A stretch of DNA of 64,000 nucleotides, from the NCBI GenBank assembly GCA_964187785.1, contig OZ076415.1, forward strand, positions 47,492,001-47,556,000, in the 5' to 3' direction. The position numbers and the translations under genes are program-made. Below, piece after piece: positions 1-56,843 of the stretch. The DNA comes from Amphiscolops sp. MND2022 (Eukaryota). The notes beneath the pieces are model-generated. The model was given only the letters and a program-made list of their open reading frames with translations. It was not told the DNA's origin and made no database searches. The first letter of the stretch is position 1. Each line of letters starts with the position of its first letter.

Positions 1-3000
1 AACACAGTTCACAGAAGCAGTCAAACCAAAAACTAACATTAAAGAAAAAGCAGAGAGCAAAAAGTGAAAAGTTGAATCAAATTCAGACACTGATGACATC
101 ATTGTTCAGATCCGTCTTGAAACACACATCACACTAATATTTGACTGCAATTCAAAAAGAAAACGGCTTCTAGAGCCATGAAGTTTTACAAAGGCCAGTG
201 AAAACGAAGACAATTTGAAAAGTGGCCAGGCGCACTAATGATTCATCGAATGGAATTCAGATATTGAGAGCATCATTGTTCAGACCCTTCTTAAAGACAT
301 CACAATGGTAAATGACTGAAAATTTAAAGGAAACAGGTTACTAGAATCAACACAGTTCACAAAAGCAGTCAAACAGAAAACGAACGTTTCTAGAGAAAAG
401 GCAGACAGCAAAAAATGAAAAGTCGAATCAAATTCAGATACTGATGACATCATTGTTCAGATCCGTCTTCAAACACATCACACTATTACTTGACTGAAAT
501 TCAAAAAGAAAACGGCTTCTAGAGCCATGAAGTTTCACAAAAACCAGTGAAAACGAAGACAATTTGAAAAGTGGCCAGGCGCCCTAATGATTCATCGAAA
601 TGAATTCAGATATTGAGAGCATCATTGTTCAGACCCTTCTTAAAGACATCACAATGATTGTTGACTGAAATCTTAATGGAAACAGGCATCATGGTTCACA
701 GAAGCAGTCAAACAGAAAACGAACGTTTCTAGAGAAAAAGCAGACAGCATAAAATGAATAGTCGAATCAAATGCAGATCTGATGATATCATTGTTCAGAT
801 CCGTCTTGAAACACACATCACACTAATATTTGACAGGAATTCAGAAGGAAAACGGTTCTAGAGCTATGAAGTTTCACAAAGGCCAGTGAAAACGAAGACA
901 ATTTGAAAAGTGGCCAGGCGCACTAATGATTCATCGATTGGAATTCAGATATTGATAGCATCAGTGTTCAGACCCGTCTTAAAGACATCACAATGATAGT
1001 TGACTGAAAGCTTAATGGAAACAGGCTACTAGAATCAACACAGTTCACAAAAGCAGTCACAGAAAACGAAGTTTCTAGATAAAATGCAGACAGCAAAAAA
1101 AGTCGAATCAAAATCAGATACCGATGACATCATTGTTCAGATCCGCCTTGAAACACACATCAAATGTTTGACTGAAATTCAGAAGGAAACGGCTTCTAGA
1201 GCCATGAAGTTTCACAAAGGCCAGTGAAAACGAAGACAATTCGAAAAGTGGGCAGGCGCACTAATGATTTATCGAATGGAAATCAGATATTGAGAGCATC
1301 ATTGTTCAGATCCGTCTTGAACACATCACAATGATAGTTGACTGAAATTTTATTGGAAACAGGCTGCTAGAATCAACACAGTTCACAGAAGCAGTCAAAC
1401 CAAAAACTAACATTAAAGAAAAAGCAGAGAGCAAAAAGTGAAAAGTTGAATCAAATTCAGACACTGATGACATCATTGTTCAGATCCGTCTTGAAACACA
1501 CATCACACTAATATTTGACTGCAATTCAAAAAGAAAACGGCTTCTAGAGCGATGAAGGTTCACGAAGGCCAGTTAAAACGAAGACAATTTGAAAAGTGGC
1601 CAGGTGCAATAATGATTTATCGACTGGAATTCAGATATTGAGAGCATCATTGTTCAGACCCGTCTCAAAGACATCACAATGATAGTTGACTGAAATTTTA
1701 TTGGAAACAGGTTGCTAGAATCAACACAGTTCACAGAAGCAGTCAAACCAAAAACGAACATTAAAGAAAAAGCAGAGAGCAAAAAGTGAAAAATTGAATC
1801 AAATTCAGACACTGATGACATCATTGTTCAGATGCGTCTTGAAACACACATCACACTAATATTTGACTGCAATTCAAAAAGAAAACGGCTTCTAGAGCCA
1901 TGAAGGTTCACGAAGGCCAGTTAAAACGAAGACAATTTGAAAAGTGGCCAGGTGCAATAATGATTTATTGACTGGAATTCAGATATTGAGAGCATCATTG
2001 TTCAGACCCGTCTTGAAGACATCACAATGACAGTTGACTGAAATTTTAATGGAAACAGGATACTAGAATCAACCAGTTCACAGAAGCAGTCAAACCAAAA
2101 ACGAACATTAAAGAAAAAACAGAGCAAAAATTGAAAAGTTGAATCAAATTCAGATACTGATGACATCATTGTTCAGATCCGTCTTGAAACACACATCACT
2201 AATATTTGACTGCAATTCAAAAGGAAAACGGCTTCTAAAGCCATGAAGTTTTACAAAGGCCAGTGAAAACGAAGACAATTTGAAAAGTGGCCAGGCGCAC
2301 TAATGATTCATCGAATGGAATTCAGATATTGAGAGCATCATTGTTCAGACCCTTCTTAAAGACATCACAATGGTAAATGACTGAAAATTTAAAGGAAACA
2401 GGCTACTAGAATCAACACAGTTCACAAAAGCAGTCAAACAGAAAACGAACGTTTCTAGAGAAAAGGCAGACAGCAAAAAATGAAAAGTCGAATCAAATTC
2501 AGATACTGATGACATCTTTGTTCAGATCCGTCTTCAAACACACATCACACTATTATTTGACTGAAATTCAAAAAGAAAACGGCTTCTAGAGCCATGAAGG
2601 TTCACGAAGGCCAGTTACAACGAAGACAATTTGAAAAGTGGCCAGGTGCAATAATGATTTATCGACTGGAATGCAGATATTGATAGCATCAGAGTTCAGA
2701 CCCGTCTTAAAGACATCACAATGATAGTTGACTGAAAGCCTAATGGAAACAGGCTACTAGAATCAACACAGTTCACAAAAGCAGTCACAGAAAACGAAGT
2801 TTCTAGATATAATGCAGACAGCAAAAAAGTCGAATCAAAATCAGATACCGATGACATCATTGTTCAGATCCGCCTTGAAACACACATCAAATGTTTGACT
2901 GAAATTCAGAAGGAAACGGCTTCTAGAGCCATGAAGTTTCACAAAGGCCAGCGAAAACGAAGACAATTCGAAAAGTGGGCAGGCGCACTAATCATTTATC

Positions 3001-6000
3001 GAATGGAAATCAGATATTGAGAGCATCATTGTTCAGACCCGTCTTGAACACATCACAATGATTGTTGACTGAAATTTTATTGGAAACAGGCTGCTAGAAT
3101 CAACACAGTTCACAGAAGCAGTCAAACCAAAAACTAACATTAAAGAAAAAGCAGAGAGCAAAAAGTGAAAAGTTGAATCAAATTCAGACACTGATGACAT
3201 CATTGTTCAGATCCGTCTTGAAACACACATCACACTAATATTTGACTGCAATTCAAAAAGAAAACGGCTTCTAGAGCCATGAAGGTTCACGAAGGCCAGT
3301 TACAACGAAGACAATTTGAAAAGTGGCCAGGTGCAATAATGATTTATCGACTGGAATGCAGATATTGATAGCATCAGAGTTCAGACCCGTCTTAAAGACA
3401 TCACAATGATAGTTGACTGAAAGCCTAATGGAAACAGGCTACTAGAATCAACACAGTTCACAAAAGCAGTCACAGAAAACGAAGTTTCTAGATATAATGC
3501 AGACAGCAAAAAAGTCGAATCAAAATCAGATACCGATGACATCATTGTTCAGATCCGCCTTGAAACACACATCAAATGTTTGACTGAAATTCAGAAGGAA
3601 ACGGCTTCTAGAGCCACGAAGTTTCACAAAGGCCAGTGAAAACGAAGACAATTCGAAAAGTGGGCAGGCGCACTAATGATTTATCGAATGGAAATCAGAT
3701 ATTGAGAGCATCATTGTTCAGACCCGTCTTGAACACATCACAATGATAGTTGACTGAAATTTTATTGGAAACAGGCTGCTAGAATCAACACAGTTCACAG
3801 AAGCAGTCAAATCAAAAACTAACATTAAAGAAAAAGCAGAGAGCAAAAAGTGAAAAGTTGAATCAAATTCAGACACTGATGACATCATTGTTCAGATCCG
3901 TCTTGAAACACACATCACACTAATATTTGACTGCAATTCAAAAAGAAAACGGCTTCTAGAGCCATGAAGGTTCACGAAGGCCAGTTACAACGAAGACAAT
4001 TTGAAAAGTGGCCAGGTGCAAAAATGATTTATCGACTGGAATGCAGATATTGATAGCATCAGAGTTCAGACCCGTCTTAAAGACATCACAATGATAGTTG
4101 ACTGAAAGCCTAATGGAAACAGGCTACTAGAATCAACACAGTTCACAAAAGCAGTCACAGAAAACGAAGTTTCTAGATATAATGCAGACAGCAAAAAAGT
4201 CGAATCAAAATCAGATACCGATGACATCATTGTTCAGATCCGCCTTGAAACACACATCAAATGTTTGACTGAAATTCAGAAGGAAACGGCTTCTAGAGCC
4301 ACGAAGTTTCACAAAAGCCAGTGAAAACGAAGACAATTCGAAAAGTGGGCAGGCGCACTAATGATTTATCGAATGGAAATCAGATATTGAGAGCATCATT
4401 GTTCAGACCCGTCTTGAACACATCACAATGATAGTTGACTGAAATTTTATTGGAAACAGGCTGCTAGAATCAACACAGTTCACAGAAGCAGTCAAACCAA
4501 AAACTAACATTAAAGAAAAAGCAGAGAGCAAAAAGTGAAAAGTTGAATCAAATTCAGACACTGATGACATCATTGTTCAGATCCGTCTTGAAACACACAT
4601 CACACTAATATTTGACTGCAATTCAAAAAGAAAACGGCTTCTAGAGCCATGAAGGTTCACGAAGGTCAGTTAAAACGAAGACAATTTGAAAAGTGGCCAG
4701 GTGCAATAATGATTTATCGATTGGAATTCAGATATTGAGAGCATCATTGTTCAGACCCGTCTTAAAGACATCACAATGATAGTTGACTGAAATTTTATTG
4801 GAAACAGGCTGCTAGAATCAACACAGTTCACAGAAGCAGTCAAACCAAAAACGAACATTAAAGAAAAAGCAGAGAGCAAAAAGTGAAAAGTTGAATCAAA
4901 TTCAGACACTGATGACATCATTGTTCAGATGCGTCTTGAAACACACATCACACTAATATTTGACTGCAATTCAAAAAGAAAACGGCTTCTAGAGCCATGA
5001 AGGTTCACGAAGGCCAGTTAAAACGAAGACAATTTGAAAAGTGGCCAGGTGCAATAATGATTTATCGACTGGAATTCAGATATTGAGAGCATCATTGTTC
5101 AGACCCGTCTTAAAGACATCACATTGAGAGTTGACTGAAATCTTAATGGAAACAGGCTAATAGAATCAACACAGTAAACAGAAGCAGTCAAACCAAAAAC
5201 GAACGTTTCTAGATAAAAGGCTGACAGCAAAAAAAAGTCGAATCAAAATCAGATACTGATGACATCATTGTTCAGATCCGCCTTGAAACACACATCAAAT
5301 GTTTGACTGAAATTCAGAAGGAAAACGGCTTCTAGAGCCATGAAGTTTCACAAAGGCCAGTTAAAACGAAGACAATTTGAAAAGTGGCGAGGTGCAATAA
5401 TGATTTATCGACTGGAATGCAGATATTGATAGCATCAGTGTTCAGACCCGTCTTAAAGACATCACAATGATAGTTGACTGAAAACTTAATGGAAACAGGC
5501 TACTAGAATCAACACAGTTCACAAAAGCAGTCACACAGAAAACGAAGTTTCTAGATAAAATGCAGACAGCAAAAAAAAGAAGTCGAATCAAAATCAGATA
5601 CTGATGACACCATTGTTCAGATCCGCCTTGAAACACACATCAAATGTTTGACTGATATTCAGAAGGAAAACGGCTTCTAGAGCCATGAAGTTTCACAAAG
5701 GCCAGTGAAAACAAAGACAATTCGGAAAGTGGGCAGGCGCACTAATGATTTATCGAAGGAAATCAGATATTGAGAGCATCATTGTTCAGACCCGTCTTGA
5801 ACACATCACAATGATAGTTGACTGAAAATTTATTGGAAACAGGCTGCTAGAATCAACACAGTTCACAGAAGCAGTCAAACCAAAAACGAACATTAAAGAA
5901 AAAGCAGAGAGCAAAAAGTGAAATTTGAACCAAATTCAGACACTGATGACATCATTGTTCAGATCCGTCTTGAAACACACATCACACTAATATTTGACTG

Positions 6001-6941
6001 CAATTCAAAAAGGAAACGGCTTCTAGAGCCATGAAGGTTCACGAAGGCCAGTTAAAACGAAGACAATTTGAAAAGTGGCCAGGTGCAATAATGATTTATC
6101 GACTGGAATTCAGATATTAGAGCATCATTGTTCAGACCCGTCTTAAAGACATCACATTGAGAGTTGACTGAAATCTTAATGGAAACAGGCTACTAGAATC
6201 AACACAGTTCACCGAAGCAGTCAAACCAAAAACGAACGACATTAAAGAAAAAGCAGAGAGCAAAAAGTGAAAAGTTGAATCAAATTCAGACACTGATGAC
6301 ATCATTGTTCAGATCCGTCTTGAAACACACATCACACTAATACATGACTCCAAGTCAAAAAGAAAACAGTTTCTAGAGCCATGAAGGTTCGGGAGGCCAG
6401 TTAAAACGAAGACAATTTGAAAAGTGGCCAGGTGCAATAATGATTTATCGACCGGAATTCAGATATTGAGAGCATCATTGTTCAGACCCGTCTTAAAGAC
6501 ATCACAATGATAGTTGACTGAAAGCTTAATGGAAACAGGCTACTAGAATCAATACAGTTCACAAAAGCAGTCACACAGAAAACGAAGTTTCTAGATAAAA
6601 TGCAGACAGCAAAAAAAAGAAGTCGAATCAAAATCAGATACTGATGACATCATTGTTCAGATCCGCCTTGGAACACACATCAAATGTTTGACTGAAATTC
6701 AGAAGGAAAACGGCTTCTAGAGCCATGAAGTTTCACAAAGGCCAGTGAAAACGAAGACAATTCGAAAAGTGGGCAGGCGCACTAATGATTTATCGAATGG
6801 AAATCAGATATTGAGAGCATCATTGTTCAGACCCGTCTTGAACACATCACAATGATAGTTGACTGAAAATTTATTGGAAACAGGCTGCTAGAATCAACAC
6901 AGTTCACAGAAGCAGTCAAACCAAAAACGAACATTAAAGAA

Positions 6942-7573
6942 CCAGAGCCGCATGTGCGGTAAAGGAGTCGGCTTAGGTATTTTTTTCTGAAGTCGAAAAA
7001 TGGCCCTTTTTTGACCATTTTTGGGCTAATTTTGGCTATGTTTCTCACATCCCAGCCATACGATTTTGATGCCATTGCACATATAGGACTCTAATATGGT
7101 GTAGAATATCTGTAGAAAATTTCGTTCGAATCGTATGGACAGTTTTTGAGAAAATCGAAAAAAGTCGAAAAATGGCTGTTTTTTGGCCATTTTTGGGCTA
7201 ATTTTGGCTATGTTTCTCACATCCCAGCCATACGATTTTGATGCCATTGCACATATAGGACTCTAATATGGTGTAGTATAACTGTAGAAAATTTCGTTCG
7301 AATCGTATGAAGTTTTTGAGAAAATCGAAAAAAGTCGAAAAATGGCTGTTTTTTGGCCATTTTTGGGCTAATTTTGACTATGTTTCTCACATCCCAGCCA
7401 TACGATTTTGATGCCTTTGCACACGCAGGGGCCCCTTTGGGTGTGAATGACTGTGCAAAATTTCGTGAAAATCGTATGGACAGTTTTTGAGAAATTTGAA
7501 ATTTTCATGAAAAGGTCGGGAGAAAAAAAACAACACGATTGCATAAGTAGTCGAAAATTTTTTCCGACTCCTG
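6942..7573 (-). mobile_element. Non-autonomous Helentron/HINE-like element, copy 1, with internal ~172-bp tandem repeats
   Basis: Subterminal inverted repeats AGGAGTCGG (6963-6971) and CCGACTCCT (7564-7572), plus a hairpin CCGCA-TG-TGCGG near one end. It is inserted in an A/T homopolymer of the satellite spacer (cattaaagaaaaagcag) with no obvious TSD. About three internal 172-bp units, the third diverged. Confidence 0.7.
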
Positions 7574-8272
7574 AAAAGCAGAGAGCAAAAAGTGAAAAGT
7601 TGAATCAAATTCAGACACTGATGACATCATTGTTCAGATCCGTCTTGAAACACACATCACACTAATATTTGACTGCAATTCAAAAAGGAAACGGCTTCTA
7701 GAGCCATGAAGGTTCACGAAGGCCAGTTAAAACGAAGACAATTTGAAAAGTGGCCAGGTGCAATAATGATTTATCGACTGGAATTCAGATATTAGAGCAT
7801 CATTGTTCAGACCCGTCTTAAAGACATCACATTGAGAGTTGACTGAAATCTTAATGGAAACAGGCTACTAGAATCAACACAGTTCACCGAAGCAGTCAAA
7901 CCAAAAACGAACGACATTAAAGAAAAAGCAGAGAGCAAAAAGTGAAAAGTTGAATCAAATTCAGACACTGATGACATCATTGTTCAGATCCGTCTTGAAA
8001 CACACATCACACTAATATTTGACTGCAATTCAAAAAGAAAACGGCTTCTAGAGCCATGAAGGTTCACGAAGGCCAGTTAAAACGAAGACAATTTGAAAAG
8101 TGGCCAGGTGCAATAATGATTTATCGACTGGAATTCAGATATTGAGAGCATCATTGTTCAGACCCGTCTTGAACACATCACAATGATAGTTGACTGAAAA
8201 TTTATTGGAAACAGGCTGCTAGAATCAACACAGTTCACAGAAGCAGTCAAACCAAAAACGAACATTAAAGAA

Positions 8273-8906
8273 CCAGAGCCGCATGTGCGGTAAAGGAGTC
8301 GGCTTAGGTATTTTTTTCTGAAGTCGAAAAATGGCCCTTTTTTGACCATTTTTGGGCTAATTTTGGCTATGTTTCTCACATCCCAGCCATACGATTTTGA
8401 TGCCATTGCACATATAGGACTCTAATATGGTGTAGAATATCTGTAGAAAATTTCGTTCGAATCGTATGGACAGTTTTTGAGAAAATCGAAAAAAGTCGAA
8501 AAATGGCTGTTTTTTGGCCATTTTTGGGCTAATTTTGGCTATGTTTCTCACATCCCAGCCATACGATTTTGATGCCATTGCACATATAGGACTCTAATAT
8601 GGTGTAGAATAACTGTAGAAAATTTCGTTCGAATCGTATGAACAGTTTTTGAGAAAATCGAAAAAAGTCGAAAAATGGCTGTTTTTTGGCCATTTTTGGG
8701 CTAATTTTGACTATGTTTCTCACATCCCAGCCATACGATTTTGATGCCTTTGCACACGCAGGGGCCCCTTTGGGTGTGAATGACTGTGCAAAATTTCGTG
8801 AAAATCGTATGGACAGTTTTTGAGAAATTTGAAATTTTCATGAAAAGGTCGGGAGAAAAAAAACAACACGATTGCATAAGTAGTCGAAAATTTTTTCCGA
8901 CTCCTG
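8273..8906 (-). mobile_element. HINE-like element, copy 2
   Basis: Near-identical to copy 1, at the same satellite position, offset ~1331 bp. Confidence 0.7.
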
Positions 8907-9605
8907 AAAAGCAGAGAGCAAAAAGTGAAAAGTTGAATCAAATTCAGACACTGATGACATCATTGTTCAGATCCGTCTTGAAACACACATCACACTAATA
9001 TTTGACTGCAATTCAAAAAGGAAACGGCTTCTAGAGCCATGAAGGTTCACGAAGGCCAGTTAAAACGAAGACAATTTGAAAAGTGGCCAGGTGCAATAAT
9101 GATTTATCGACTGGAATTCAGATATTAGAGCATCATTGTTCAGACCCGTCTTAAAGACATCACATTGAGAGTTGACTGAAATCTTAATGGAAACAGGCTA
9201 CTAGAATCAACACAGTTCACCGAAGCAGTCAAACCAAAAACGAACGACATTAAAGAAAAAGCAGAGAGCAAAAAGTGAAAAGTTGAATCAAATTCAGACA
9301 CTGATGACATCATTGTTCAGATCCGTCTTGAAACACACATCACACTAATATTTGACTGCAATTCAAAAAGAAAACGGCTTCTAGAGCCATGAAGGTTCAC
9401 GAAGGCCAGTTAAAACGAAGACAATTTGAAAAGTGGCCAGGTGCAATAATGATTTATCGACTGGAATTCAGATATTGAGAGCATCATTGTTCAGACCCGT
9501 CTTGAACACATCACAATGATATTTGACTGAAAATTTATTGGAAACAGGCTGCTAGAATCAACACAGTTCACAGAAGCAGTCAAACCAAAAACGAACATTA
9601 AAGAA

Positions 9606-10239
9606 CCAGAGCCGCATGTGCGGTAAAGGAGTCGGCTTAGGTATTTTTTTCTGAAGTCGAAAAATGGCCCTTTTTTGACCATTTTTGGGCTAATTTTGGC
9701 TATGTTTCTCACATCCCAGCCATACGATTTTGATGCCATTGCACATATAGGACTCTAATATGGTGTAGAATATCTGTAGAAAATTTCGTTCGAATCGTAT
9801 GGACAGTTTTTGAGAAAATCGAAAAAAGTCGAAAAATGGCTGTTTTTTGGCCATTTTTGGGCTAATTTTGGCTATGTTTCTCACATCCCAGCCATACGAT
9901 TTTGATGCCATTGCACATATAGGACTCTAATATGGTGTAGAATAACTGTAGAAAATTTCGTTCGAATCGTATGAACAGTTTTTGAGAAAATCGAAAAAAG
10001 TCGAAAAATGGCTGTTTTTTGGCCATTTATGGGCTAATTTTGACTATGTTTCTCACATCCCAGCCATACGATTTTGATGCCTTTGCACACGCAGGGGCCC
10101 CTTTGGGTGTGAATGACTGTGCAAAATTTCGTGAAAATCGTATGGACAGTTTTTGAGAAATTTGAAATTTTCATGAAAAGGTCGGGAGAAAAAAAACAAC
10201 ACGATTGCATAAGTAGTCGAAAATTTTTTCCGACTCCTG
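9606..10239 (-). mobile_element. HINE-like element, copy 3
   Basis: Near-identical to copies 1-2, offset 1333 bp, same insertion junctions. Confidence 0.7.
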
Positions 10240-10933
10240 AAAAGCAGAGAGCAAAAAGTGAAAAGTTGAATCAAATTCAGACACTGATGACATCATTGTT
10301 CAGATCCGTCTTGAAACACACATCACACTAATATTTGACTGCAATTCAAAAAGGAAACGGCTTCTAGAGCCATGAAGGTTCACGAAGGCCAGTGAAAACG
10401 AAGACAATTTGAAAAGTGGCCAGGTGCAATAATGATTTATCGACTGGAATTCAGATATTGAGAGCATCATTGTTCAGACCCGTCTTAAAGACATCACAAT
10501 GATAGTTGACTGAAAGCTTAATGGAAACAGGCTACTAGAATCAATACAGTTGACAAAAGCAGTCACACAGAAAACGAAGTTTCTAGATAAAATGCAGACA
10601 GCAAAAAAAAGAAGTCGAATCAAAATCAGATACTGATGACATCATTGTTCAGATCCGCCTTGGAACACACATCAAATGTTTGACTGAAATTCAGAAGGAA
10701 AACGGCTTCTAGAGCCATGAAGTTTCACAAAGGCCAGTGAAAACGAAGACAATTCGAAAAGTGGGCAGGCGCACTAATGATTTATCGAATGGAAATCAGA
10801 TATTGAGAGCATCATTGTTCAGACCCGTCTTGAACACATCACAATGATAGTTGACTGAAAATTTATTGGAAACAGGCTGCTAGAATCAACACAGTTCACA
10901 GAAGCAGTCAAACCAAAAACGAACATTAAAGAA

Positions 10934-11568
10934 CCAGAGCCGCATGTGCGGTAAAGGAGTCGGCTTAGGTATTTTTTTCTGAAGTCGAAAAATGGCCCTT
11001 TTTTGACCATTTTTGGGCTAATTTTGGCTATGTTTCTCACATCCCAGCCATACGATTTTGATGCCATTGCACATATAGGACTCTAATATGGTGTAGAATA
11101 TCTGTAGAAAATTTCGTTCGAATCGTATGGACAGTTTTTGAGAAAATCGAAAAAAGTCGAAAAATGGCTGTTTTTTGGCCATTTTTGGGCTAATTTTGGC
11201 TATGTTTCTCACATCCCAGCCATACGATTTTGATGCCATTGCACATATAGGACTCTAATATGGTGTAGAATAACTGTAGAAAATTTCGTTCGAATCGTAT
11301 GGACAGTTTTTGAGAAAATCGAAAAAAGTCGAAAAATGGCTGTTTTTTGGCCATTTTTGGGCTAATTTTGGCTATGTTTCTCACATCCCAGCCTTACGAT
11401 TTTGATGCCTTTGCACACGCAGGGGCCCCTTTGGGTGTAGAATGACTGTGCAAAATTTCGTGAAAATCGTATGGACAGTTTTTGAGAAATTTGAAATTTT
11501 CATGAAAAGGTCGGGAGAAAAAAAAACAACACGATTGCATAAGTAGTCGAAAATTTTTTCCGGCTCCT
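10934..11568 (-). mobile_element. HINE-like element, copy 4
   Basis: Same element and junctions, with a few substitutions (ccggctcct right end). Confidence 0.7.
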
Positions 11569-28236: not shown

Positions 28237-28286
28237 TCAGATACTGATGACATCATTGTTCAGACCCGTCTTGAAACACACATCAC
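28237..28286 (-). ncRNA. Example B-type core with an uninterrupted 17-nt match to 28S rRNA
   Basis: Plus strand 28263-28279 reads GACCCGTCTTGAAACAC, identical to the conserved eukaryotic LSU segment used for primer D3A (from recall). It is also seen at 28964-28980. Confidence 0.6.
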
Positions 28287-41315: not shown

Positions 41316-41379
41316 TCAAATTCAGATACTGATGACATCATTGTTCAGATCCGTCTTGAAACACACATCAAATATTTGA
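41316..41379 (-). ncRNA. Example B-type core with canonical kink-turn geometry (64 nt)
   Basis: Minus strand: TCAAAT-ATT-TGATGT-GTGTTTCAAGACGGAT-CTGA-ACA-ATGATGT-CATCAGTAT-CTGA-ATTTGA. This gives a 6-bp terminal stem (TCAAAT/ATTTGA), a 3-nt bulge, and boxes C, D', C' and D. Confidence 0.6.
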
Positions 41380-44300: not shown

Positions 44301-47300
44301 CCGTCTTAAAGACATCACAATGATATTTGACTGAAATTTTAATGGAAACAGGCTACTAGAACCATCAGGTTTCACAAAAGCAGTCAAACAGAAAACGAAG
44401 GTTTCTAGATAAAAGGCAGACAGCAAAAAATGAAGTTGAATCAAATTCAGATACTGATGACATCATTGTTCAGATCCGTCTTGAAACACACATCAAATAT
44501 TTGACTGAAATTCAGAAGGAAAACGGGTTCTAGAGCCATGAAAGTTCACTAAGTCCAATGAAAACGAAGACGATTCGAAAAGTGGCCAGGTGCAATAATG
44601 ATTTATCGACTGGGATTCAGATATTGATAGCATCATTGTTCAGACCCGTCTTGAAGACATCACAATGATAGTTGACTGAAATTTTAATGGAAACAGGCTA
44701 CTAAAATCAACACAGTTCACAAAAGCAGTCACACAGAAAACGAACGTTTCTAGATAAAAGGCAGACAGCAAAAAATGAAGTCGAATCAAATTCAGATACT
44801 GATGACATCATTGTTCAGATCCGTCTTGAAACACACATCACGCTAATATTTGACTGAAATTCAAAAGGAAAACAGCTTCTAGAGCCATTAAAGTTCACAA
44901 AGGTCAGTGAAAACGAAGACGATTCGAAAAGTGGCCAGGTGCAATAATGATTTATCGACTGGAATTCAGATATTGATAGCATCATTGTTGAGACCTGTCT
45001 TAAAGACATCACAATGATAGCTGACTGAAATTTTAATGGAAACAGGCTACTAGAACCATCAGGGTTCACAAAAGCAGTCAAACAGAAAACGAACGTTTCT
45101 AGATAAAATGCAGACAGCAAAAAATGAAGTCGAATCAAAATCAGATACTGATGACTTCATCGTTCAGATCCGTCTTGAAACACACATCAACTATTTGACT
45201 GAAATTCAGAAAGAAAACGGCTTCTAGAGCCATGAAGGTTCACGAAGGCCAGTTAAAAGGAAGATAATTTGAAAAGTGGCCAGGTGCAGAAATGATTTAT
45301 CGACTGGAATTCAGATAGTGATAGCATCAGTGTTCAGACCCGTCTTGAAGACATCACAATGATAGTTGACTGAAATTTTAATGGAAACAGGCTACTAGAA
45401 TCAACACAGTTCACAAAAGCAGTCAACCCAAAAACGAACGACATTAAAGAGAAAACAGAGAGCAAAAAGTGAAAAGTTGAATCAAATTCAGATACTAATG
45501 ACATCATTGTTCAGATCCGTCTTGAAACACACATCAAATATTTGACTGAAATTCAGAAGGAAAACGGGTTCTAGAGCCATGAAGGTTTACAAAGTCCAGT
45601 GAAAACTAAGACAATTTGAAAAGTGGCCAGGCGCAAGAATGATTTATCGAATGGAATTCAGATATTAATAGCATCATTGTTCAGACCCGTCTTGAAGACA
45701 TCACAATGATAGTTGACTGAAATTTTAATGGAAACAGTCTACTAGAATCAACACAGTTCGCAAGAAGTTAATCCAAAAACGAACGACATTAAAGAAAAAG
45801 CAGAGAGCAAAAAGTGAAAAGTTGAATCAAATTCAGATACTGAAGACATCATTGTTCAGATCCGTCTTGAAACACACATCAAATATTTGACTGAAATTCA
45901 GAAGGAAAACGGGTTCTAGAGCCATGAAACTTCACAAAGTCCAGTGAAAACGAAGACGATTCGGAAAGTGGCCAGGTGCAATAATGATTTATCGACTGGA
46001 ATTCAGATATTGATAGCATCAATGTTCAGACCCGTCTTGAAGACATCACAATGATAGTTGACTGAAATTTTAATGGAAACAGGCTACTAGAATCAACACA
46101 GTTCACAGAAGCAGTCAACCCAAAAACGAACGACATTAACGAGAAAACAGAGCAAAAAGTGAAAAGTTGAATCAAATTCAGATACTGATGACATCATTGT
46201 TCAGATCCGTCTTGAAACACACATCACACTAATATTTGACTGCAATTCAAAAGGAAAACGGCTTCTAGAGCCAAGAAGATTCACGAAGGCCAGTTAAAAC
46301 GAAGACAAAATGAAAAGTGGCCAGGTGCAATAATGATTTATCGACTGGAATTCAGATATTGATAGCATCAACGTTCAGACCCGTCTTGAAGGCATCACAA
46401 TGATAATTGACTAAAATTTTAATGGAAACAGGCTACTAGAATCATCATGGTCACAAAATCAGTCAAACAGAAAACGAAACGTTTTTAGAGAAAAGGCCGA
46501 CAGCAAAAAAACGAAAAGTCGAATCAAATTCAGATACTGATGACATCATTGTTCAGATCCGTCTTGGAACAAATATCAAATAATTGACCGAAATTCAGAA
46601 GAAAACGGCTTCTAGAGCCATGAAGGTTCACAAAGGCCACTGAAAACGAAGACGATTCGAAAAGTGGCCAGGTGCAATAATGATTTATCGACTGGAATTC
46701 AGATATTGATAGCATCATTGTTGAGACCAGTCTTGAAGACATCACAATGATAGTTGACTGAAACTTTAATGGAAACAGGCTACTAGAACCATCAGGTTTC
46801 ACAAAAGCAGTCAAACAGAAAACGAAGGTTTCTAGATAAAAGGCAGACAGCAAAAAATGAAGTCGAATCAAAATCAGATACTGATGACATCATTGTTCAG
46901 ATCCGTCTTGGAACAAATATCAAATAATTGACCGAAATTCAGAAAGAAAACGGCTTCTAGAGCCATGAAGGTTCCCAAAGGCCAGTGAAAACGAAGACGA
47001 TTCGAAAAGTGGCCAGGTGCAATAATGATTTATCGACTGGAATTCAGATATTGATAGCATCATTGTTCAGACCCGTCTTGAAGACATCATAATGATAGTT
47101 GACTGAAAGTTCAATGGAAACAGGCTACTAGAATCAACAGAGTTCACAGAAGCAGTCAACCCAAAAACGAACGACATTAACGAGAAAACAGAGAGCAAAA
47201 AGTGAAAAGTTGAATTAAATTCAGATACTGATGACATCATTGTTCAGAACCGTCTTGAAACACACATCAAATATTTGACTAAAATTGAGAAGGAAAACGG

Positions 47301-50089
47301 GTTCTAGAGCCATGAAAGTTCACAAAGTCCAGTGAAAACGAAGACGATTCGAAAAGTGCCAGGTGCAATAATGATTTATCGACTGGAATTCAGATATTGA
47401 TAGCATCATTGTTCAGACCCGTCTTGAAGACATCACAATGATAGTTGACTGAAATTTTATTGGAAACAGGCTACTAGAATCATCATGGTCACAAAAGCAG
47501 TCAAACAGAAAACGAACGACATTAAAGAAAAAGAGAGCAAAAAGTGAAAAGTTGAATCAAATTCAGATACTGATGCCATCATTGTTCAGATCCGTCTTGA
47601 AACACACATCACACTAATATTTGACTAAAATGCAAAAAGAAAACGGCTTCTAGAGCCATGAAGTTTCACAAAGGCCAGTGAAAACGAAGACAACTTGAAA
47701 AGTGGCCAGGCGCACTAATGATTTATCGAATGGAATTCAGATATTGAGAGCATCATTGTTCAGACCCGTCTTAAAGACATCACCTTGACAGTTGACTGAA
47801 ATCTTAATGGAAACAGGCTACAAGAATCATCATGGTTCACAAAAGCAGCCAACAGAAAACGAACGTTTTTAGAGAAAAAGCCGACAGCAAAAAACGAAAA
47901 GTCGAATCAAATTCAGACACTGATGACATCATTGTTCAGATCCATCTTGAAACAAATCAAATATTTGACTCAAATTCAGAATGAAAACGACTTCTAGAGC
48001 CATGAAGGTTCACAAAGGCCAGTGAAAACGAAGACAATTTGAAAAGTGGCCAGGCGCAAGAATGGTATTATCGAATGGAATTCAGATATTAATAGCATCA
48101 TTGTTCAGACCCGTCTTGAAGACATCACAATGATAGTTGACTGAAATTTTAATAGAAACAGGCTACTAGAATCATCATGGTCACAAAATCAGTCAAACAG
48201 AAAACAAAACGTTTTTAGAGAAAAGGCCGACAGCAAAAAAACGAAAAGTCGAATCAAATTCAGATACTGATGATATCATTGTTCAGATCCATCTTGAAAC
48301 AAATCAAATATTTGACTCAAATTCAGAATGAAAACGACTTCTAGAGCCATGAAGGTTCACAAAGGCCAGTGAAAACGAAAACAATTTGAAAAGTGGCCAG
48401 GCGCAAGAATGGTATTATCGAATGGAATTCAGATATTAATAGCATCATTGTTCAGACCCGTCTTGAAACACACATCAAATATTTGACTAAAATTCAGAAG
48501 GAAAACGGGTTCTAGAGCCATGAAAGTTCACAAAGTCCAGTGAAAACGAAGACGATTCTAAAAGTGCCAGGTGCAATAATGATTTATCGACTGGAATTCA
48601 GATATTGATAGCATCATTGTTCAGACCCGTCTGGAAGACATCACAATGATAGTTGACTGAAATTTTAATGGAAACAGGCTACTAGAATCATCATGGTTCA
48701 CAAAAGCAATCCAACAGAAAACGAACGTTTTTACAGAAAAGGCCGACAGCAAAAAAAAACGAAAAGTCGAAACAAATTCAGACACTGATGACATCACTAT
48801 TCAGATCCGTCTTGAAACACAAATCAAATATTTGACTGAATTTCAGAAGGAAAATGGCTTCTAGAGACATGAAGGTTCACAAAGGCCAGTGAACACGAAG
48901 ACAATTTGAAAAGCGGCCAGGCGCAATAACGATTTATCGAATGGAATTCAGATATTAATAGCATCATTGTTCAGACCCGTCTTGAAGACATCACAATGAT
49001 AGTTGACTGAAATTTTAATGGAAACAGGCTACTAGAATCAACATAGTTCACAAAAGCAGTCAACCCAAAAACGAACGACATTAAAGAAAAGAGAGCAAAA
49101 AGTGAAAAGTTAAATCAAATTCAGATACTGATGACATCATTGTTCAGATCCGTGTTAAAATACACATCACACTAATATTTGACTAAAATTCAAAAGGAAA
49201 TCGGCTTCTAGAGCCATGAAGTTTCACAAAGGCCAGTGAAAACTACAACAACTTGAAAAGTGGCCAGGCGCACTAATGATTCATCGAATGGAATTCAGAT
49301 ATTGAGAGCATCATTGTTCAGACCCGTCTTAAAGACATCACCTTGACAGTTGACTGAAATCTTAATGGAAACAGGCTACAAGAATCATCATGGTTCACAA
49401 AAGCAGTCAAACAGAAAACGAACGTTTTCAGAGAAAAGGCCGACACCAAAAAACGAAAAATCGAATCAAATTCAGATACTGATGACATCATTGTTCAGAT
49501 CCGTCTTGAAACACAAATCAAATATTTGACTGACATTATAAGGAAAATGGCTTCTAGAGCCATGAAGGTTCACAAAGGCCAGTGAACACGAAGACAATTT
49601 GAAAAGTGGCCAGGCACAATAATGATTTATCGAATGGAATTCAGATATTAATAGCATCAATGTTCAGACCCGTCTTAAAGACATCACAATGATAGTTGAC
49701 TGAAATTTTAATGGAAACAGGCTACTAGAATCAACACAGTTCACAGAAGCAGTCAAACAAAGAACAAACGTTTTTAGAGAAAAAGCCGACAGCAAAAAAA
49801 ACGAAAAGTCGAATCAAATTCAGATACTGATGACATCATTGTTCAGATCCGTCTTGAAACACAAATCAAATATTTGACTGACATTAAGAAGGAAAATGGC
49901 TTCTAGAGCCATGAAGGTTCACAAAGGCAGTGAACACGAAGACAATTTGAAAAGTGGCCAGGCGCAATAATGATTTATCGAATGGAATTCAGATATTGAT
50001 AGCATCAATGTTCAGACCCGTCTTGAAAACATCACAATGATAGTTGACTGAAATTTTAATGGAAACAGGCTACTAGAATCAACACAGTT

Positions 50090-53000
50090 CACATAAGCAG
50101 TCAATCCAAAAACGAACGACATTAAAGTAAAGAGCAACGAGTGAAAAGTTGAATCAAATTCAGATACTGATGACATCATTGTTCTGATCCGTGTTGAAAC
50201 ACACATCACAGTAATATTTGACTAAAATTCAAAAGGAAAACGGCTTCTAGAGCCATGAAGTTTAACAAAGGCCAGTGAAAACGAAGACAACTTGAAAAGT
50301 GGCCAGGCGCACTAATGATTCATCGAATGGAATTCAGATATTGAGAGAATCATTGTTCAGACCCGTCTTAAAGACACCACCTTGACAGTTGACTGAAATC
50401 TTAATGGAAACAGGCTACAAGAATCATCATGGTTCACAGAAGCAGTCAAACAGAAAACGAACGTTTTCAGAGAAAAGGCCGACACCAAAAAAAAAACGAA
50501 AAGTCGAATCATATTCAGATACTGATGACATCATTGTTCAGATCCGTCTTGAAACACAAATCAAATATTTGACTGAAATTCAGAAGGAAATGGCTTCTAG
50601 AGACATGAAGGTTCACAAAGGCCAGTTAAAACGAAGACAACTTGAAAAGTGGCCAGGCGCACTAATGATTCATCGAATGGAATTCAGATATTGAGAGCAT
50701 CATTGTTCAGACCCGTCTTGAAGACATCACCTTGACAGTTGACTGAAATCTTAATGGAAACAGGCTACTAGAATCATCATGGTTCACAAAAGCAGTCAAA
50801 CAGAAAATGAACGTTTTCAGATAAAAGGCAGACGGCAAAAAAAGAAAAGTCGAATCAAAGTCAGATACTGATGACATCATTGTTCAGATTTGTCTTGAAA
50901 CACACATCACACTAACATTTGACTGAAATTCAAAAGGAAAACGGCTTCTGGAGCCTCACAAAGGCCAGTGAAAACGAATACAATTTGAAAAGTGGCCAGG
51001 CGCAATAATGATATATCGAATGGAATTCAGATATTGATAGCATCATTGTTCAGACCCGTCTTAAAGACATCACAATGATAGTTGACTGAAATTTTATTGG
51101 AAACAGGCTACTAGAATCAACACAGTTCACAGAAGCAGTCAAACCAAAAACGAACGACATTGAAGAAAAAGCAGAGCAAAAAGTGAAAAGTTGAATCAAA
51201 TTCAGATACTGATGACATCATTGTTCAGATGCGTCTTGAAACACACATCACACTAATATTTGACTGCAATTCAAAAAGAAAACGGCTTCTAGAGCCATGA
51301 AAGTTCACAAAGGCCAGTGAATACGAAGACAATTTGAAAACAAGGCCAGGAGCAATAATGATTTATCGAATGGAATTCAGATATTGATAGCATCATTGTT
51401 CAGACCCGTCTTGAAGACATCACAATGATAGTTGACTGAAATTTTAATGGAAACAGGCTACTAGAATCAACACAGTTCACAGAAGCAGTCAAACAGAAAA
51501 CTAACGTTTTCAGAGAAAAGGCCGACACCAAAAAACGAAAAGTCGAACCATATTCAGATACTGATGACACCATTGTTCAGATCCGTCTTGAAACACAAAT
51601 CAAATATTTGACTGAAATTCAGAAGGAAATGGCTTCTATAGACATGAAGGTTCACAAAGGCCAGTGAAAACGAAGACAACTTGAAAAGTGGCCAGGCGCA
51701 CTAATGATTTATCGAATGGAAATCAGATATTGAGAGCATCATTGTTCAGACCCGTCTTAAAGACATCACCTTGACAGTTGACTGAAATTTCAATGGAAAC
51801 AGGCTACCGGAATCATCATGGTTCACAAAAGCAGTCAAACAGAAAATGAACATTTTCAGATAAAAGGCAGACGGCAAAAAATGAAAAGTCGAATCAAATT
51901 CAGATACTGATGACATCATTGTTCAGATTTGTCTTGAAAAACATATCACACTAACATTTGACTGAAATTCAAAAGGAAAACGGCTTCTGGAACCGTGAAG
52001 GCTCACGAAGGCCAGCGAAAACGAATATAATCTAAAAAGTGGCCGGGCGCAATAATGATATATCGAATGGATTTCAGATATTGATAGCATCATTGTTCAG
52101 ACCCGTCTTAAAGACATCACAATGATAGTTGACTGAAATTTTAATGGAACCAGGCTACTAGAATCAACACAGTTCACAGAAGCAGTCAAACCAAAAACGA
52201 ACGACATTAAAGAAAAAGCAGAGCAAAAAATGAAAAGTTGAATCAAATTCAGATACTGATGACATCATTGTTCAGATCCGTCTTGAAACACACATCACTA
52301 ATATTTGACTGCAATTCAAAAGGAAAATGGCTTCTAAAGCCATGAAGGTTCACAAAGGCCAGTGAACACGAAGACAATTTGAAAAGTGGCCAGGCGCAAT
52401 AATGATTTATCGAATGGAATTCAGATATTAATAGCATCAATGTTCAGACCCGTCTTGAAGACATCACAATGATAGTTGACTGAAATTTTATTGGAAACAG
52501 GCTACTAGAATCAACACAGTTCACATAAGCAGTCAATCCAAAAACGGACGACATTAAAGAAAAGAGCAAATAGTGAAAAGTTGAATCAAATTCAGTTACT
52601 GATGACATCATTGTTCAGATCCGTCTTGAAACACACATCACACTAATATTTGACTAAAATTCAAAAGGAAAACGGCTTCTGGAGCCATGAAGTTTAACAA
52701 AGGCCAGCGAAAACGAAGACAACTTGAAAAGTGGCCAGGCGCACTAATGATTCATCGAATGGAATTCAGATATTGAGAGAATCATTGTTCAGACCCGTCT
52801 TAAAGACACCACCTTGACAGTTGACTGAAATCTTAATGGAAACAGGCTACAAGAATCATCATGGTTCACAGAAGCAGTCAAACAGAAAACGAACGTTTTC
52901 AGAGAAAAGGCCGACACCAAAAAAAAACGAAAAGTCGAATCATATTCAGATACTGATGACATCATTGTTCAGATCCGTCTTGAAACACAAATCAAATATT

Positions 53001-55500
53001 TGACTGAAATTCAGAAGGAAATGGCTTCTAGAGACATGAAGGTTCACAAAGGCCAGTTAAAACGAAGACAACTTGAAAAGTGGCCAGGCGCACTAATGAT
53101 TCATCGAATGGAATTCAGATATTGAGAGCATCATTGTTCAGACCCGTCTTGAAGACATCACCTTGACAGTTGACTGAAATCTTAATGGAAACAGGCTACT
53201 AGAATCATCATGGTTCACAAAAGCAGTCAAACAGAAAATGAACGTTTTCAGATAAAAGGCAGACGGCAAAAAAAGAAAAGTCGAATCAAAGTCAGATACT
53301 GATGACATCATTGTTCAGATTTGTCTTGAAACACACATCACACTAACATTTGACTGAAATTCAAAAGGAAAACGGCTTCTGGAGCCTCACAAAGGCCAGT
53401 GAAAACGAATACAATTTGAAAAGTGGCCAGGCGCTATAATGATATATCGAATGGAATTCAGATATTGATAGCATCATTGTTCAGACCCGTGTTAAAGACA
53501 TCACAATGATAGTTGACTGAAATTTTATTGGAAACAGGCTACTAGAATCAACACAGTTCACAGAAGCAGTCAAACCAAAAACGAACGACATTAAAGAAAA
53601 AGCAGAGCAAAAAGTGAAAAGTTGAATCAAATTCAGATACTGATGACATCATTGTTCAGATGCGTCTTGAAACACACATCACACTAATATTTGACTGCAA
53701 TTCAAAAAGAAAACGGCTTCTAGAGCCATGAAAGTTCACAAAGGCCAGTGAATACGAAGACAATTTGAAAACAAGGCCAGGCGCAATAATGATTTATCGA
53801 ATGGAATTCAGATATTGATAGCATCATTGTTCAGACCCGTCTTGAAGACATCACAATGATAGTTGACTGAAATTTTAATGGAAACAGGCTACTAGAATCA
53901 ACACAGTTCACAGAAGCAGTCAAACAGAAAACTAACGTTTTCAGAGAAAAGGCCGACACCAAAAAACGAAAAGTCGAACCATATTCATATACTGATGACA
54001 TCATTGTTCAGATCCGTCTTGAAACACAAATCAAATATTTGACTGAAATTCAGAAGGAAATGGCTTCTATAGACATGAAGGTTCACAAAGGCCAGTGAAA
54101 ACGAAGACAACTTGAAAAGTGGCCAGGCGCACTAATGATTCATCGAATGGAATTCAGATATTGAGAGCATCATTGTTCAGACCTGTCTTGAAGACATCAC
54201 AATGATAGTTGACTGAAATTTCAATGGAAACAGGCTACTAGAATCAACACAATTCACATAAGCAGTCAATCCAAAAACGAACATTAAAGAAAAAAGCAAA
54301 TAGTGAAAAGTTGAATCAAATTCAGATACTGATGACATCATTGTTCAGATCCGTCTTGAAACACACATCACACTAATATTTGACTAAAATTCAAAAGGAA
54401 AACGGCTTCTACAGCCATGAAGTTTCACAAAGGCCAGTGAAAACTAAGACAACTTGAAAAGTGGCCAGGCGCACTAATGATTTATCGAATGGAAATCAGA
54501 TATTGAGAGCATCATTGTTCAGACCCGTCTTAAAGACATCACCTTGACAGTTGACTGAAATCTTAATGGAAACATGCTACCAGAATCATCATGGTTCACA
54601 AAAGCAGTCAAACAGAAAATGAACGTTTTCAGATAAAAGGCAGACGGCAAAAAATGAAAAGTCGAATCAAATTCAGATACTGATGACATCATTGTTCAGA
54701 TTTGTCTTGAAACACATATCACACTAACATTTGACTGAAATTCAAAAAGAAAACGGCTTCTGGAACCGTGAAGGCTCACGAAGGCCAGTGAAAACGAATA
54801 TAATCTAAAAAGTGGCCGGGCGCAATAATGATATATCGAATGGATTTCAGATATTGATAGCATCATTGTTCAGACCCGTCTTAAAGACATCACAATGATA
54901 GTTGACTGAAATTTTAATGGAACCAGGCTACTAGAATCAACACAGTTCATAGAAGCAGTCAAACCAAAAACGAACGACATTAAAGAAAAAGCAGAGCAAA
55001 AAATGAAAAGTTGAATCAAATTCAGATACTGATGACATCATTGTTCAGATCCGTCTTGAAACACACATCACTAATATTTGACTGCAATTCAAAAGGAAAA
55101 TGGCTTCTAAAGCCATGAAGGTTCACAAAGGCCAGTGAACACGAAGACAATTTGAAAAGTGGCCAGGCGCAATAATGATTTATCGAATGGAATTCAGATA
55201 TTAATAGCATCAATGTTCAGACCCGTCTTGAAGACATCACAATGATAGTTGACTGAAATTTTAATGGAAACAGGCTACTAGAATCAACACAGTTCACATA
55301 AGCAGTCAATCCAAAAACGGACGACATTAAAGAAAAGAGCAAATAGTGAAAAGTTGAATCAAATTCAGATACTGATGACATCATTGTTCAGATCCGTCTT
55401 GAAACACACATCACACTAATATTTGACTAAAATTCAAAAGGAAAACGGCTTCTGGAGCCGTGAAGGCTCACAAAGGCCAGTGAAAACGAATACAATTTGA
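50090..55500. repeat. Diverged edge domain of the satellite with ~2.43-kb and ~2.77-kb internal duplications
   Basis: ctggagcctcacaaagg occurs at ~50948 and ~53379. Junk ORFs 50389/52821 are offset 2432 and 52249/55022 are offset 2773. Confidence 0.8.
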
Positions 55501-55732
55501 AAAGTGGCCAGGCGCAATAATGATATATCGAATGGAATTCAGATATTGATAGCATCATTGTTCAGACCCGTCTTAAAGACATCACATTGATAGTTGAATG
55601 AAATCGTAATGAAAACAGGCTACTAAAATCATCATGGTTCACAAAATCAGTGAAACAGAAAACGAACGTCTTTAGAGAAAAGGCAGACAGCAAAAAATGA
55701 AAAGTCGAATCAAATTCAGATAGTGATGGCAT

Positions 55733-55767
55733 CAGTACTAACTGTTGATTAGCAGTACTAACTGTTG
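55733..55767. repeat. 15-bp direct repeat duplicating the splice donor at the array boundary
   Basis: cagtactaactgttg at 55733-55747 and 55753-55767. Each copy contains minus-strand GTTAGT. Confidence 0.9.
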
Positions 55768-56838: not shown

Positions 56839-56843
56839 GTTTT

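What the first reader, a model, noticed from the sequence alone, without database searches (positions are those of the whole stretch)
1..55762. At least 55.7 kb of satellite forms intron 3 of an apparently intact ankyrin gene
Seen: three clean in-frame exons, then a GTTAGT donor at 55762, the array starting ~30 nt later, and no unique exon-like sequence anywhere to base 1. The other two introns are only 146 and 627 bp. Known: satellite-filled giant introns exist in Drosophila Y-linked fertility genes. Inference: the remaining exons lie left of the window, and transcription would read through hundreds of snoRNA-like cores in sense orientation. Alternatively the gene is truncated, or reads through to the stop at 55562.
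Basis: partly seen in the sequence, partly recalled or inferred. Interest (0 to 1): 0.8.

Follow-up and report, generated by a model that had tools for sequence, protein, structure and literature searches.

The report
Giant satellite intron in intact gene
A conserved ankyrin-plus-TIR (immune-type) gene of an unidentified invertebrate has one intron swollen from about 250-300 bases in related species to 63,000 bases by a tandem satellite made of snoRNA-like units pointing the same way as the gene, yet its coding sequence is still intact.

Summary
On the minus strand lie three clean exons (56838-56678, 56531-56489, 55861-55763). A GTTAGT donor sits at 55762, and a 175/349-bp satellite starts 28 nt later and fills the window down to base 1.

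I found the missing exons. A contig of the same sample (L007) matches window 1-2176 at 100% identity. It runs on through 6.9 kb more satellite and 359 unique bases to a good acceptor and seven further exons.

- **Intron 3:** 63,051 nt, 99% of it satellite-array span.
- **Spliced model:** an intact 496-residue protein with an ankyrin-repeat region (about nine repeats by eye) and a TIR domain. Both haplotypes have it, and they differ by one synonymous base.
- **Related assemblies:** in two other assemblies the same intron is 249 and 295 bp, with no satellite.
- **Constraint between species:** amino-acid change is rare while synonymous sites are saturated.
- **snoRNA-like cores:** about 350 box C/D-like cores, all on the gene's sense strand.

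Expression and splicing could not be tested, because no RNA run was available. The closest known case is the satellite-filled giant introns of Drosophila Y-linked fertility genes. A withheld follow-up report of this scan overlaps this stretch, and another note treats the snoRNA-like nature of the satellite.

The parts
56678..56838 (-). Exon 1 coding part (ATG 56838-56836; N-terminal cap repeat plus the first half of an ankyrin repeat), ending at donor GTATGT
   Evidence: Pfam Ank_4 E=1e-7; 87-89% amino-acid identity to L001/L002
56532..56677 (-). Intron 1 (146 nt, GT..AG); absent from the relatives L001, L002 and L006, where exons 1 and 2 are fused
56489..56531 (-). Exon 2 (43 nt)
55862..56488 (-). 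Intron 2 (627 nt)
55763..55861 (-). Exon 3 (99 nt, exactly one ankyrin repeat); 32 of 33 residues identical to L001 and L002
55735..55762 (-). Unique 5' stub of intron 3, with donor GTTAGT at 55762-55757. A 15-nt copy of the exon/intron boundary (55753-55767) is repeated at 55733-55747. This gives a second identical donor 20 nt downstream, which would be out of frame if used
   Evidence: the junction is identical in both haplotypes
1..55734 (-). Satellite array part of intron 3 seen in the window. Monomers are 175 bp, paired as 349-bp A/B dimers, all in one orientation. The gene-sense strand carries box C/D snoRNA-like cores. The array continues 6,930 bp beyond window base 1 (L007 2177-9106)
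6936..11567 (.). Sub-domain in which a ~640-bp MITE-like element is repeated four times together with two satellite dimers, at a spacing of about 1,333 bp. The element has terminal inverted repeats and three internal 172-bp repeats

Best explanation
The window holds the 5' end of a ten-exon gene for a 496-residue protein with an ankyrin-repeat region (about nine repeats by eye) and a C-terminal TIR domain. Its intron 3 is 63,051 nt in this haplotype: 28 unique nt, a 62,664-nt tandem array, then 359 unique nt with a polypyrimidine tract and AG.

Shown:
- The array is flanked by exon 3 on one side and exon 4 on the other, in consistent orientation, in two assemblies and in both haplotypes.
- The coding sequence is open, and between species it is under strong purifying selection.
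- The same intron is 249-295 bp and free of satellite in two related assemblies.

Inferred:
- A small ancestral intron was invaded by, or gave birth to, an array of a snoRNA-derived satellite, which then grew by unequal exchange.
- To make the protein, RNA polymerase II must read through all 63 kb, and the spliceosome must pair the donor at 55762 with an acceptor 63 kb away. This is what happens in the satellite-filled giant introns of Drosophila Y-linked genes.
- Because the roughly 350 snoRNA-like cores lie in sense, every primary transcript would carry them. Whether they are processed into stable small RNAs is unknown.
For: - **Exon structure:** exon coordinates and splice sites.
- **Physical link, exon 4 side:** L007 1-2176 equals window 2176-1 at 100%, with the next best match at 96.9%.
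- **Physical link, exon 3 side:** L004, a contig of an independent assembler from the same sample, equals window 46665-64000 at 100%.
- **Junction support:** short-read contigs bridge the exon 3/array junction in four runs.
- **Orientation:** the array in L005 and L007 is in the gene-sense orientation.
- **Coding sequence:** the 1,491-nt CDS is intact in both haplotypes with a single synonymous difference, and the array junctions are identical.
- **Domains:** Pfam Ank hits. TIR_2 profile positions 1-52 fall in exon 8 and 54-93 in exon 9, so the domain continues across that predicted splice.
- **Constraint:** against L001, exons 1-3 show 12 nonsynonymous differences over 227 sites and 62 synonymous over 69.5 sites. 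Exons 4-10 show 56 over 925 and 176 over 251.
- **Relatives:** intron 3 is 249 bp in L001 and 295 bp in L002, with no satellite in these loci.
- **Copy number:** only one locus of this gene, as two haplotypes, was found in the sample.
Against: - **No expression evidence:** there is no RNA evidence of any kind. The four runs offered behave as DNA, with flat depth over introns.
- **Central gap:** the central 4.4 kb of the array (about window 22,046-26,464) is spanned only by the window's own assembly. The second assembly probably used the same long reads, so it is not fully independent.
- **Weak within-species test:** exons show 1 difference in 1,491 nt against 18 in 5,526 nt of introns, Fisher p=0.098. 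Constraint since the array arose is therefore not demonstrated.
- **Competing signals:** an identical second donor 20 nt downstream would give an out-of-frame product. There are also 30 AATAAA hexamers on the sense strand of the array, which could end transcripts early.
Confidence: 0.75

Rival explanations
1. The gene is structurally whole but no longer functional. The array stops productive transcription or splicing, for example by heterochromatin, premature polyadenylation or use of the duplicated donor. The open reading frame survives only because too little time has passed.
For: - No RNA evidence exists.
- The haplotype polymorphism test is not significant.
- There are 30 sense AATAAA hexamers and a second identical donor 20 nt downstream.
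- The window lineage has 18 private amino-acid changes, against 10 in L001 and 8 in L002. This could also just reflect the tree shape.
Against: - Both haplotypes share identical array junctions, yet their arrays align at only about 92%. Monomers within the array differ by 10-17%. If the array diversified in place it is old, and 1,491 nt have stayed free of stops and frameshifts in both haplotypes.
- Exons carry five-fold fewer differences than introns.
Confidence: 0.15
2. Gene fission. Exons 1-3 make a short ankyrin product, either by read-through to the stop at 55562 or by ending in the array. Exons 4-10 are expressed from a separate promoter near the distal array edge.
For: The read-through ORF exists (96 aa, 55852-55562). 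A 359-nt unique stretch precedes exon 4.
Against: - Exon 3 ends exactly at a repeat boundary, with a donor of the same GTTAGT type that is used after exon 8 of the same gene.
- The read-through tail is satellite sequence, and it already differs between haplotypes (L versus V).
- Exon 4 starts in phase 0 without an ATG in a suitable context.
- Exons 1-3 stay as conserved as the rest of the gene.
Confidence: 0.06
3. Assembly artefact. Two different arrays of the same satellite were joined, so exons 1-3 and exons 4-10 are not neighbours, or the array length is wrong.
For: - Satellite arrays are hard to assemble.
- Both contigs of the second assembler stop about 29 kb into the array.
- The middle 4.4 kb rests on one assembly only.
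Against: - There are 100% overlaps of 17.3 kb and 2.2 kb with contigs from a different assembler.
- Units near the window's left end are the most similar to those next to exon 4, at 95-97% against about 88% for mid-array units.
- Orientation, phase and reading frame agree on both sides, and the same arrangement is seen in both haplotypes.
Confidence: 0.04

Closest known systems
Satellite-filled gigantic introns of Drosophila Y-linked fertility genes (kl-3, kl-5, kl-2, ks-1; PMC6508621)
   Same: - A conserved protein-coding gene whose exons are separated by an intron made almost wholly of tandem satellite DNA.
- The intron is hundreds of times larger than the gene's other introns.
- The coding sequence stays intact.
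   Different: - The intron here is 63 kb, not megabases.
- The satellite is a complex 175/349-bp repeat rather than simple 5-7-bp repeats.
- The gene is an ankyrin-TIR gene, not a dynein.
- Nothing shows Y linkage or germline expression.
- Transcription through the array is shown in flies but is untested here.
Tandem box C/D snoRNA clusters in long host genes (mammalian SNORD115/SNORD116 in SNHG14, SNORD113/114, rat Bsr); recalled from my own knowledge, not tested against sequences
   Same: Many tandem copies of a C/D snoRNA-like unit lie in sense orientation inside the introns of one Pol II transcription unit.
   Different: - In those loci each repeat unit has its own small exon and intron, with one snoRNA per intron, and the host is non-coding.
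- Here about 350 units sit in one intron of a coding gene.
- Donor-like GTRAG sites occur in only 24 places across roughly 180 dimers, so there is no repeated exon-intron unit.
- The units reach only about 16 bits against Rfam C/D models whose thresholds are 36-45 bits.
Euchromatic satellite arrays in gene-rich regions and introns (Tribolium Cast1-9, PMC11610590; short alpha-satellite arrays in human introns, PMC12653875)
   Same: - A satellite of about 170 bp sits inside a gene-rich, non-centromeric setting.
- The array begins and ends in the same monomer phase with a short overlap. That fits insertion of a circular multimer or birth in place, both of which are discussed for those satellites.
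   Different: - The intronic examples in those papers are short arrays.
- The long Tribolium arrays (up to about 112 kb) are not described there as single introns of conserved genes, since the word 'intron' does not occur in PMC11610590.
- Here the ancestral intron size is known from related assemblies.

Membership tests
Gene with satellite-filled giant intron (Drosophila Y fertility-gene type) | The intron is composed almost entirely of tandem satellite DNA and is far larger than the gene's other introns | tested here: met
   The array spans 62,664 of 63,051 nt. Of that, 60,106 nt match the satellite and about 2.6 kb are four inserts. The other introns are 146-1,395 nt.
Gene with satellite-filled giant intron (Drosophila Y fertility-gene type) | The exons on both sides belong to one intact, conserved coding gene | tested here: met
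   An open 1,491-nt CDS across the array in both haplotypes. A physical link by 100% overlap. Few nonsynonymous differences against saturated synonymous sites compared with relatives.
Gene with satellite-filled giant intron (Drosophila Y fertility-gene type) | [quoted passage not shown] | not testable with these tools
   No RNA run holding the locus was offered. The four runs behave as DNA.
Gene with satellite-filled giant intron (Drosophila Y fertility-gene type) | Megabase scale, Y linkage and spermatocyte-specific expression | tested here: not met
   The intron is 63 kb. Two haplotypes of similar coverage (95-109x contig labels) suggest a diploid, non-hemizygous locus. Expression is unknown.
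Intron-encoded box C/D snoRNA in a host gene | C and D boxes with a guide antisense to rRNA, recognised by a curated model | tested here: inconclusive
   No Rfam family reaches its gathering score. There are only 12-16-bit minus-strand matches to C/D families, and the sn668 alignment shares the guide UUCAAGACGGG. The C box, guide, D', C' and D core is the best conserved part of the monomer. It is also shared with an 87-bp repeat in a related species.
Intron-encoded box C/D snoRNA in a host gene | Sense orientation relative to the host gene | tested here: met
   285 exact and about 351 near-exact guide cores on the gene-sense strand, none on the other strand.
Intron-encoded box C/D snoRNA in a host gene | One snoRNA per intron, or a repeated exon-intron unit as in SNORD115/116 | tested here: not met
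   About 350 units lie in one intron. Donor-like sites are not conserved among the units (24 GTRAG in 63 kb).
Ankyrin-repeat plus TIR-domain protein | Pfam ankyrin repeats followed by a TIR domain in one reading frame | tested here: met
   Ank and Ank_2 hits on exons 1, 3, 5 and 7. TIR_2 on exon 8 (E=3.5e-8, above the cut-off) continues into exon 9. The single spliced ORF is shown.

The most novel reading that the evidence does not exclude
The ankyrin-TIR gene doubles as the Pol II host transcript of a roughly 350-copy array of a real box C/D snoRNA that guides methylation of a conserved 28S site. One intron would then deliver hundreds of snoRNA precursors per transcript. Selection for snoRNA output, not mere tolerance, would have driven or kept the 230-fold intron expansion. 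This would be a protein-coding host gene with a satellite-scale intronic snoRNA array, an arrangement I did not find in the library searched.
Probability: 0.15. Interest if true: 0.85.

Novelty: new variant of a known kind. Interest (0 to 1): 0.58.

Why it matters
Satellite-filled giant introns are studied almost only in Drosophila Y-linked genes. There the ancestral state is hard to see and the repeats are simple.

This case is small enough to span with long reads, and the size of the same intron in related assemblies (249-295 bp) is known. Both junctions and both haplotypes are in hand, and the gene is a conserved immune-type gene.

It makes three questions directly testable:
- How a cell transcribes and splices across a complex satellite.
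- How such arrays enter introns.
- Whether a satellite made of snoRNA-like units in sense orientation is processed from the intron.

If the units are real snoRNAs, it would also be an unusual way to encode them.

Tried and rejected
- **Hammerhead ribozyme idea.** The CTGATGA...GAAAC motif suggested a hammerhead/retrozyme satellite. Helix II does not form by eye, and Rfam gave no hit at gathering thresholds. I dropped it.
- **Exhaustive protein search with exon 1.** The results were swamped by giant multi-ankyrin proteins and said nothing about orthologues.
- **RNA evidence.** Both run searches returned only four DNA-like runs of one sample. The single read-laying run confirmed the junction but showed no splice joints.
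- **Earlier notes of the scan.** Searches by place, words and sequence gave nothing on the region left of the window.
- **Taxon identification.** ESM Atlas look-ups with the neighbouring ASC channel gene and with exon 7 gave only generic families.
- **Synteny.** The ASC gene downstream of the relatives' gene was not found within 5-10 kb downstream in this species.
- **Seed of the satellite.** I looked for a single ancestral unit in the relatives' intron 3 and found none.
- **Within-species constraint test.** It is in the expected direction but not significant (p=0.098).
- **Lineage-specific amino-acid counts.** They do not separate relaxed constraint from tree shape.
- **Search with the full spliced protein.** I did not run it because that would have meant typing a long sequence.
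Full report
**1. The observation**

Reading the minus strand of 55500-57000 in three frames and locating the boundaries gives this structure:

| Feature | Window coordinates | Size | Boundary |
|---|---|---|---|
| Exon 1 | 56838-56678 | 161 nt | ATG at 56838; donor CAG\|GTATGT |
| Intron 1 | 56677-56532 | 146 nt | GT..AG |
| Exon 2 | 56531-56489 | 43 nt | |
| Intron 2 | 56488-55862 | 627 nt | |
| Exon 3 | 55861-55763 | 99 nt | donor ACA\|GTTAGT at 55762 |

- The three exons splice in frame to 101 residues. Exons 2 and 3 both end exactly at ankyrin-repeat boundaries. Pfam ankyrin models match.
- Tandem Repeats Finder shows a 349-bp period, built of two ~175-bp half-units, from base 1 to 55734.
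- A BLAST of one dimer against the window covers 1-55734 in a single orientation. The only gaps are four ~640-bp stretches. These are copies of a MITE-like element with terminal inverted repeats and three internal 172-bp repeats.
- A tblastn of the final 496-residue protein against the window finds only exons 1-3.
- Contigs of four public runs run unbroken from 55699 to about 57818. Their depth is flat across introns and flanks, so they behave as DNA. The array edge is therefore not a local mis-join.

**2. Finding the rest of the gene**

A word-indexed search with the 101 residues found the window's own ORF fragments, plus exon 1-2 ORFs of 85-87% identity in two other ENA assemblies.

In those loci (L001, and L002/L006) the gene is compact. 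Exon 3 is followed after 249 bp (L001) or 295 bp (L002) by an exon encoding three more ankyrin repeats. Further ankyrin exons and a TIR domain come after that. No copy of the satellite occurs in these 20-kb loci.

I then searched with the relatives' exon 4 ORF. It found an 85%-identical ORF in the window's own sample, ERZ25074608. That ORF lies on two contigs, L005 (ctg167474) and L007 (ctg178346). In both contigs:
- Positions 1-9106 of the locus are the same satellite in the gene-sense orientation.
- Then come 359 unique bases ending in a polypyrimidine tract and AG.
- Then comes an exon beginning DCWTVLHE, which is the residue that follows exon 3 in the relatives.

**3. The physical link**

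- L007 positions 1-2176 equal window 2176-1 at 100.000% with no gap. Every other match of that segment to the window is 96.9% or lower.
- On the other side, L004 (ctg185542, same sample, a different assembler to judge from its contig names) equals window 46665-64000 at 100% over 17,336 bp.
- By coordinates, the two contigs would cover the window except for roughly 22,046-26,464.
- L005, the other haplotype, has no 100% overlap. Its units are closest (95-97%) to those at the window's left end and only about 88% to mid-array units. That is what is expected if the window's left end is the part of the array nearest exon 4.
- In this haplotype intron 3 is 63,051 nt: 28 unique nt, 62,664 nt of array (including four ~640-bp inserts), and 359 unique nt.

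**4. The gene model**

Boundaries come from blocks conserved with the relatives plus GT/AG sites. The gene has ten coding exons, which I number 1-10; the working labels 4a, 4b and 5-9 used during the analysis correspond to exons 4-10.
- The other introns are 146, 627, 457, 1,109, 1,395, 520, 397 and 490 nt.
- The CDS is 1,491 nt and encodes 496 residues: an ankyrin-repeat region (about nine repeats by eye), a short linker and a TIR domain.
- Pfam TIR_2 matches exon 8 at profile positions 1-52 and exon 9 at 54-93, so the domain runs on across that predicted splice.
- The second haplotype (L003 with L005) has the same exons, the same two array junctions, and one synonymous difference in the CDS.
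- That haplotype also carries a 1,993-bp hAT transposon in the intron between exons 6 and 7, with an 8-bp target duplication. L007 has the empty site.

**5. Constraint**

Against L001:

| Region | Nonsynonymous differences / sites | Synonymous differences / sites |
|---|---|---|
| Exons 1-3 | 12 / 227 | 62 / 69.5 |
| Exons 4-10 | 56 / 925 | 176 / 251 |

L002 gives similar numbers. Synonymous sites are saturated while the protein is about 90% identical, so both halves have been under strong purifying selection over the long term.

This does not date selection relative to the array. Within the species, exons show 1 difference in 1,491 nt against 18 in 5,526 nt of introns. That is five-fold lower but not significant (Fisher p=0.098).

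Indirect support comes from array age:
- The haplotypes share identical junctions, yet their arrays align at only about 92%.
- Monomers differ by 10-17%.
- If the array diversified in place, it is much older than the haplotype split, and the CDS has stayed open throughout.
- This inference fails if the array was seeded with units that had already diverged.

**6. What the satellite is**

- On the gene-sense strand each monomer carries this series: GTGATGT, a 12-14-nt stretch containing TTCAAGACGG, CTGA, TGATG, then CTGA.
- Rfam gives nothing at gathering thresholds. At permissive thresholds there are only 12-16-bit matches, nearly all on the minus strand and nearly all to box C/D families. One of them is sn668, whose guide shares UUCAAGACGGG.
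- The intron holds 285 exact and about 351 near-exact guide cores in sense and none in antisense.
- In an alignment of 301 monomers the core is the best conserved part and is common to both half-unit types.
- In the related assembly L006, an 87-bp tandem repeat in the same orientation as the gene lies 0.5 kb beyond the ASC channel gene that follows the ankyrin-TIR gene. It shares just this ~52-nt core and nothing else.

So the satellite very probably descends from a tandemly repeated C/D snoRNA gene. Whether the copies here are functional is open, and another note of this scan treats that question.

**7. How the array got there**

- The array begins at TGATGC and ends at TGATGC, the same phase of the monomer, with a 6-nt overlap. 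The match is at monomer level only: the first unit is A-type and the last is B-type. I judged this by eye from the two junctions.
- A linearised circular multimer, or tandem duplication in place between short direct repeats, would both give this pattern. Two independent breaks in another array would not, except by chance (roughly 4%).
- Next to the proximal junction, a 15-nt copy of the exon 3/intron boundary is repeated. This creates a second identical donor 20 nt downstream. I have no explanation for it beyond local slippage during the event.

**8. Comparison with what is known, and limits**

[quoted passage not shown] The present case shares the architecture. It differs in scale, repeat type, gene class and probably chromosomal setting, and it lacks expression data.
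- **Euchromatic satellites.** Short intronic alpha-satellite arrays are known in humans (PMC12653875). Euchromatic arrays of up to about 112 kb are known in Tribolium, with eccDNA proposed as the vehicle (PMC11610590).
- **snoRNA arrays.** I found no paper in the library describing a satellite-scale array of snoRNA-like units inside one intron of a coding gene. The library is incomplete.
- **Not shown:** transcription, splicing, any small RNA product, the organism's identity, and the array length in the second haplotype.

Noticed in passing
window 55733-55767: A 15-nt direct duplication of the exon 3/intron 3 boundary, with its copies separated by 5 nt, lies right at the satellite edge. It creates a second identical GTTAGT donor at 55742, which would add 20 nt and shift the frame. 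Both haplotypes have it.
   Followed up: partly
window 6936-11567: A ~640-bp MITE-like element sits inside the satellite. It has terminal inverted repeats (GGAGTCGG...CCGACTCC) and three internal 172-bp repeats. It has been co-amplified four times with two dimers, at a spacing of about 1,333 bp.
   Followed up: partly
window ~58900-64000 and L003 1-8400: A 2.28-kb tandem repeat lies upstream of the gene. Its alignment blocks suggest a different copy number in the two haplotypes. Each unit contains similar ORFs on both strands, which suggests an internal inverted duplication.
   Followed up: no
window 58320-58500: An extremely abundant short element. Summed contig depth is 1e5-1e6, against about 80 for single-copy sequence in the same runs.
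   Followed up: no
L005 12057-14049 (absent at L007 12049-12056): A polymorphic 1,993-bp hAT transposon insertion in the intron between exons 6 and 7. It has an 8-bp target duplication ATGTGCAT, terminal inverted repeats TAGGGTGACC, and transposase ORFs with a Dimer_Tnp_hAT match.
   Followed up: yes
L006 19330-20267: In a related assembly, an 87-bp tandem repeat in gene-sense orientation lies 0.5 kb beyond the ASC channel gene that follows the ankyrin-TIR gene. It shares only the ~52-nt C box, guide and D box core with the window's satellite.
   Followed up: partly
window 56532-56677; L005 9565-10021; L002 11955-12305: Intron presence differs between species. Intron 1 and the intron between exons 4 and 5 exist here but not in L001, L002 or L006. 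The relatives have an intron inside what is exon 8 here.
   Followed up: partly
window 55729-55734 and L007 9101-9106: The array starts and ends at the same monomer phase (TGATGC at both edges), so it holds a whole number of ~175-bp monomers. The first unit is A-type and the last is B-type.
   Followed up: partly
L005 19697-20459; L007 17700-19900: An unrelated 84-bp tandem repeat begins about 2.7 kb downstream of the stop codon.
   Followed up: no
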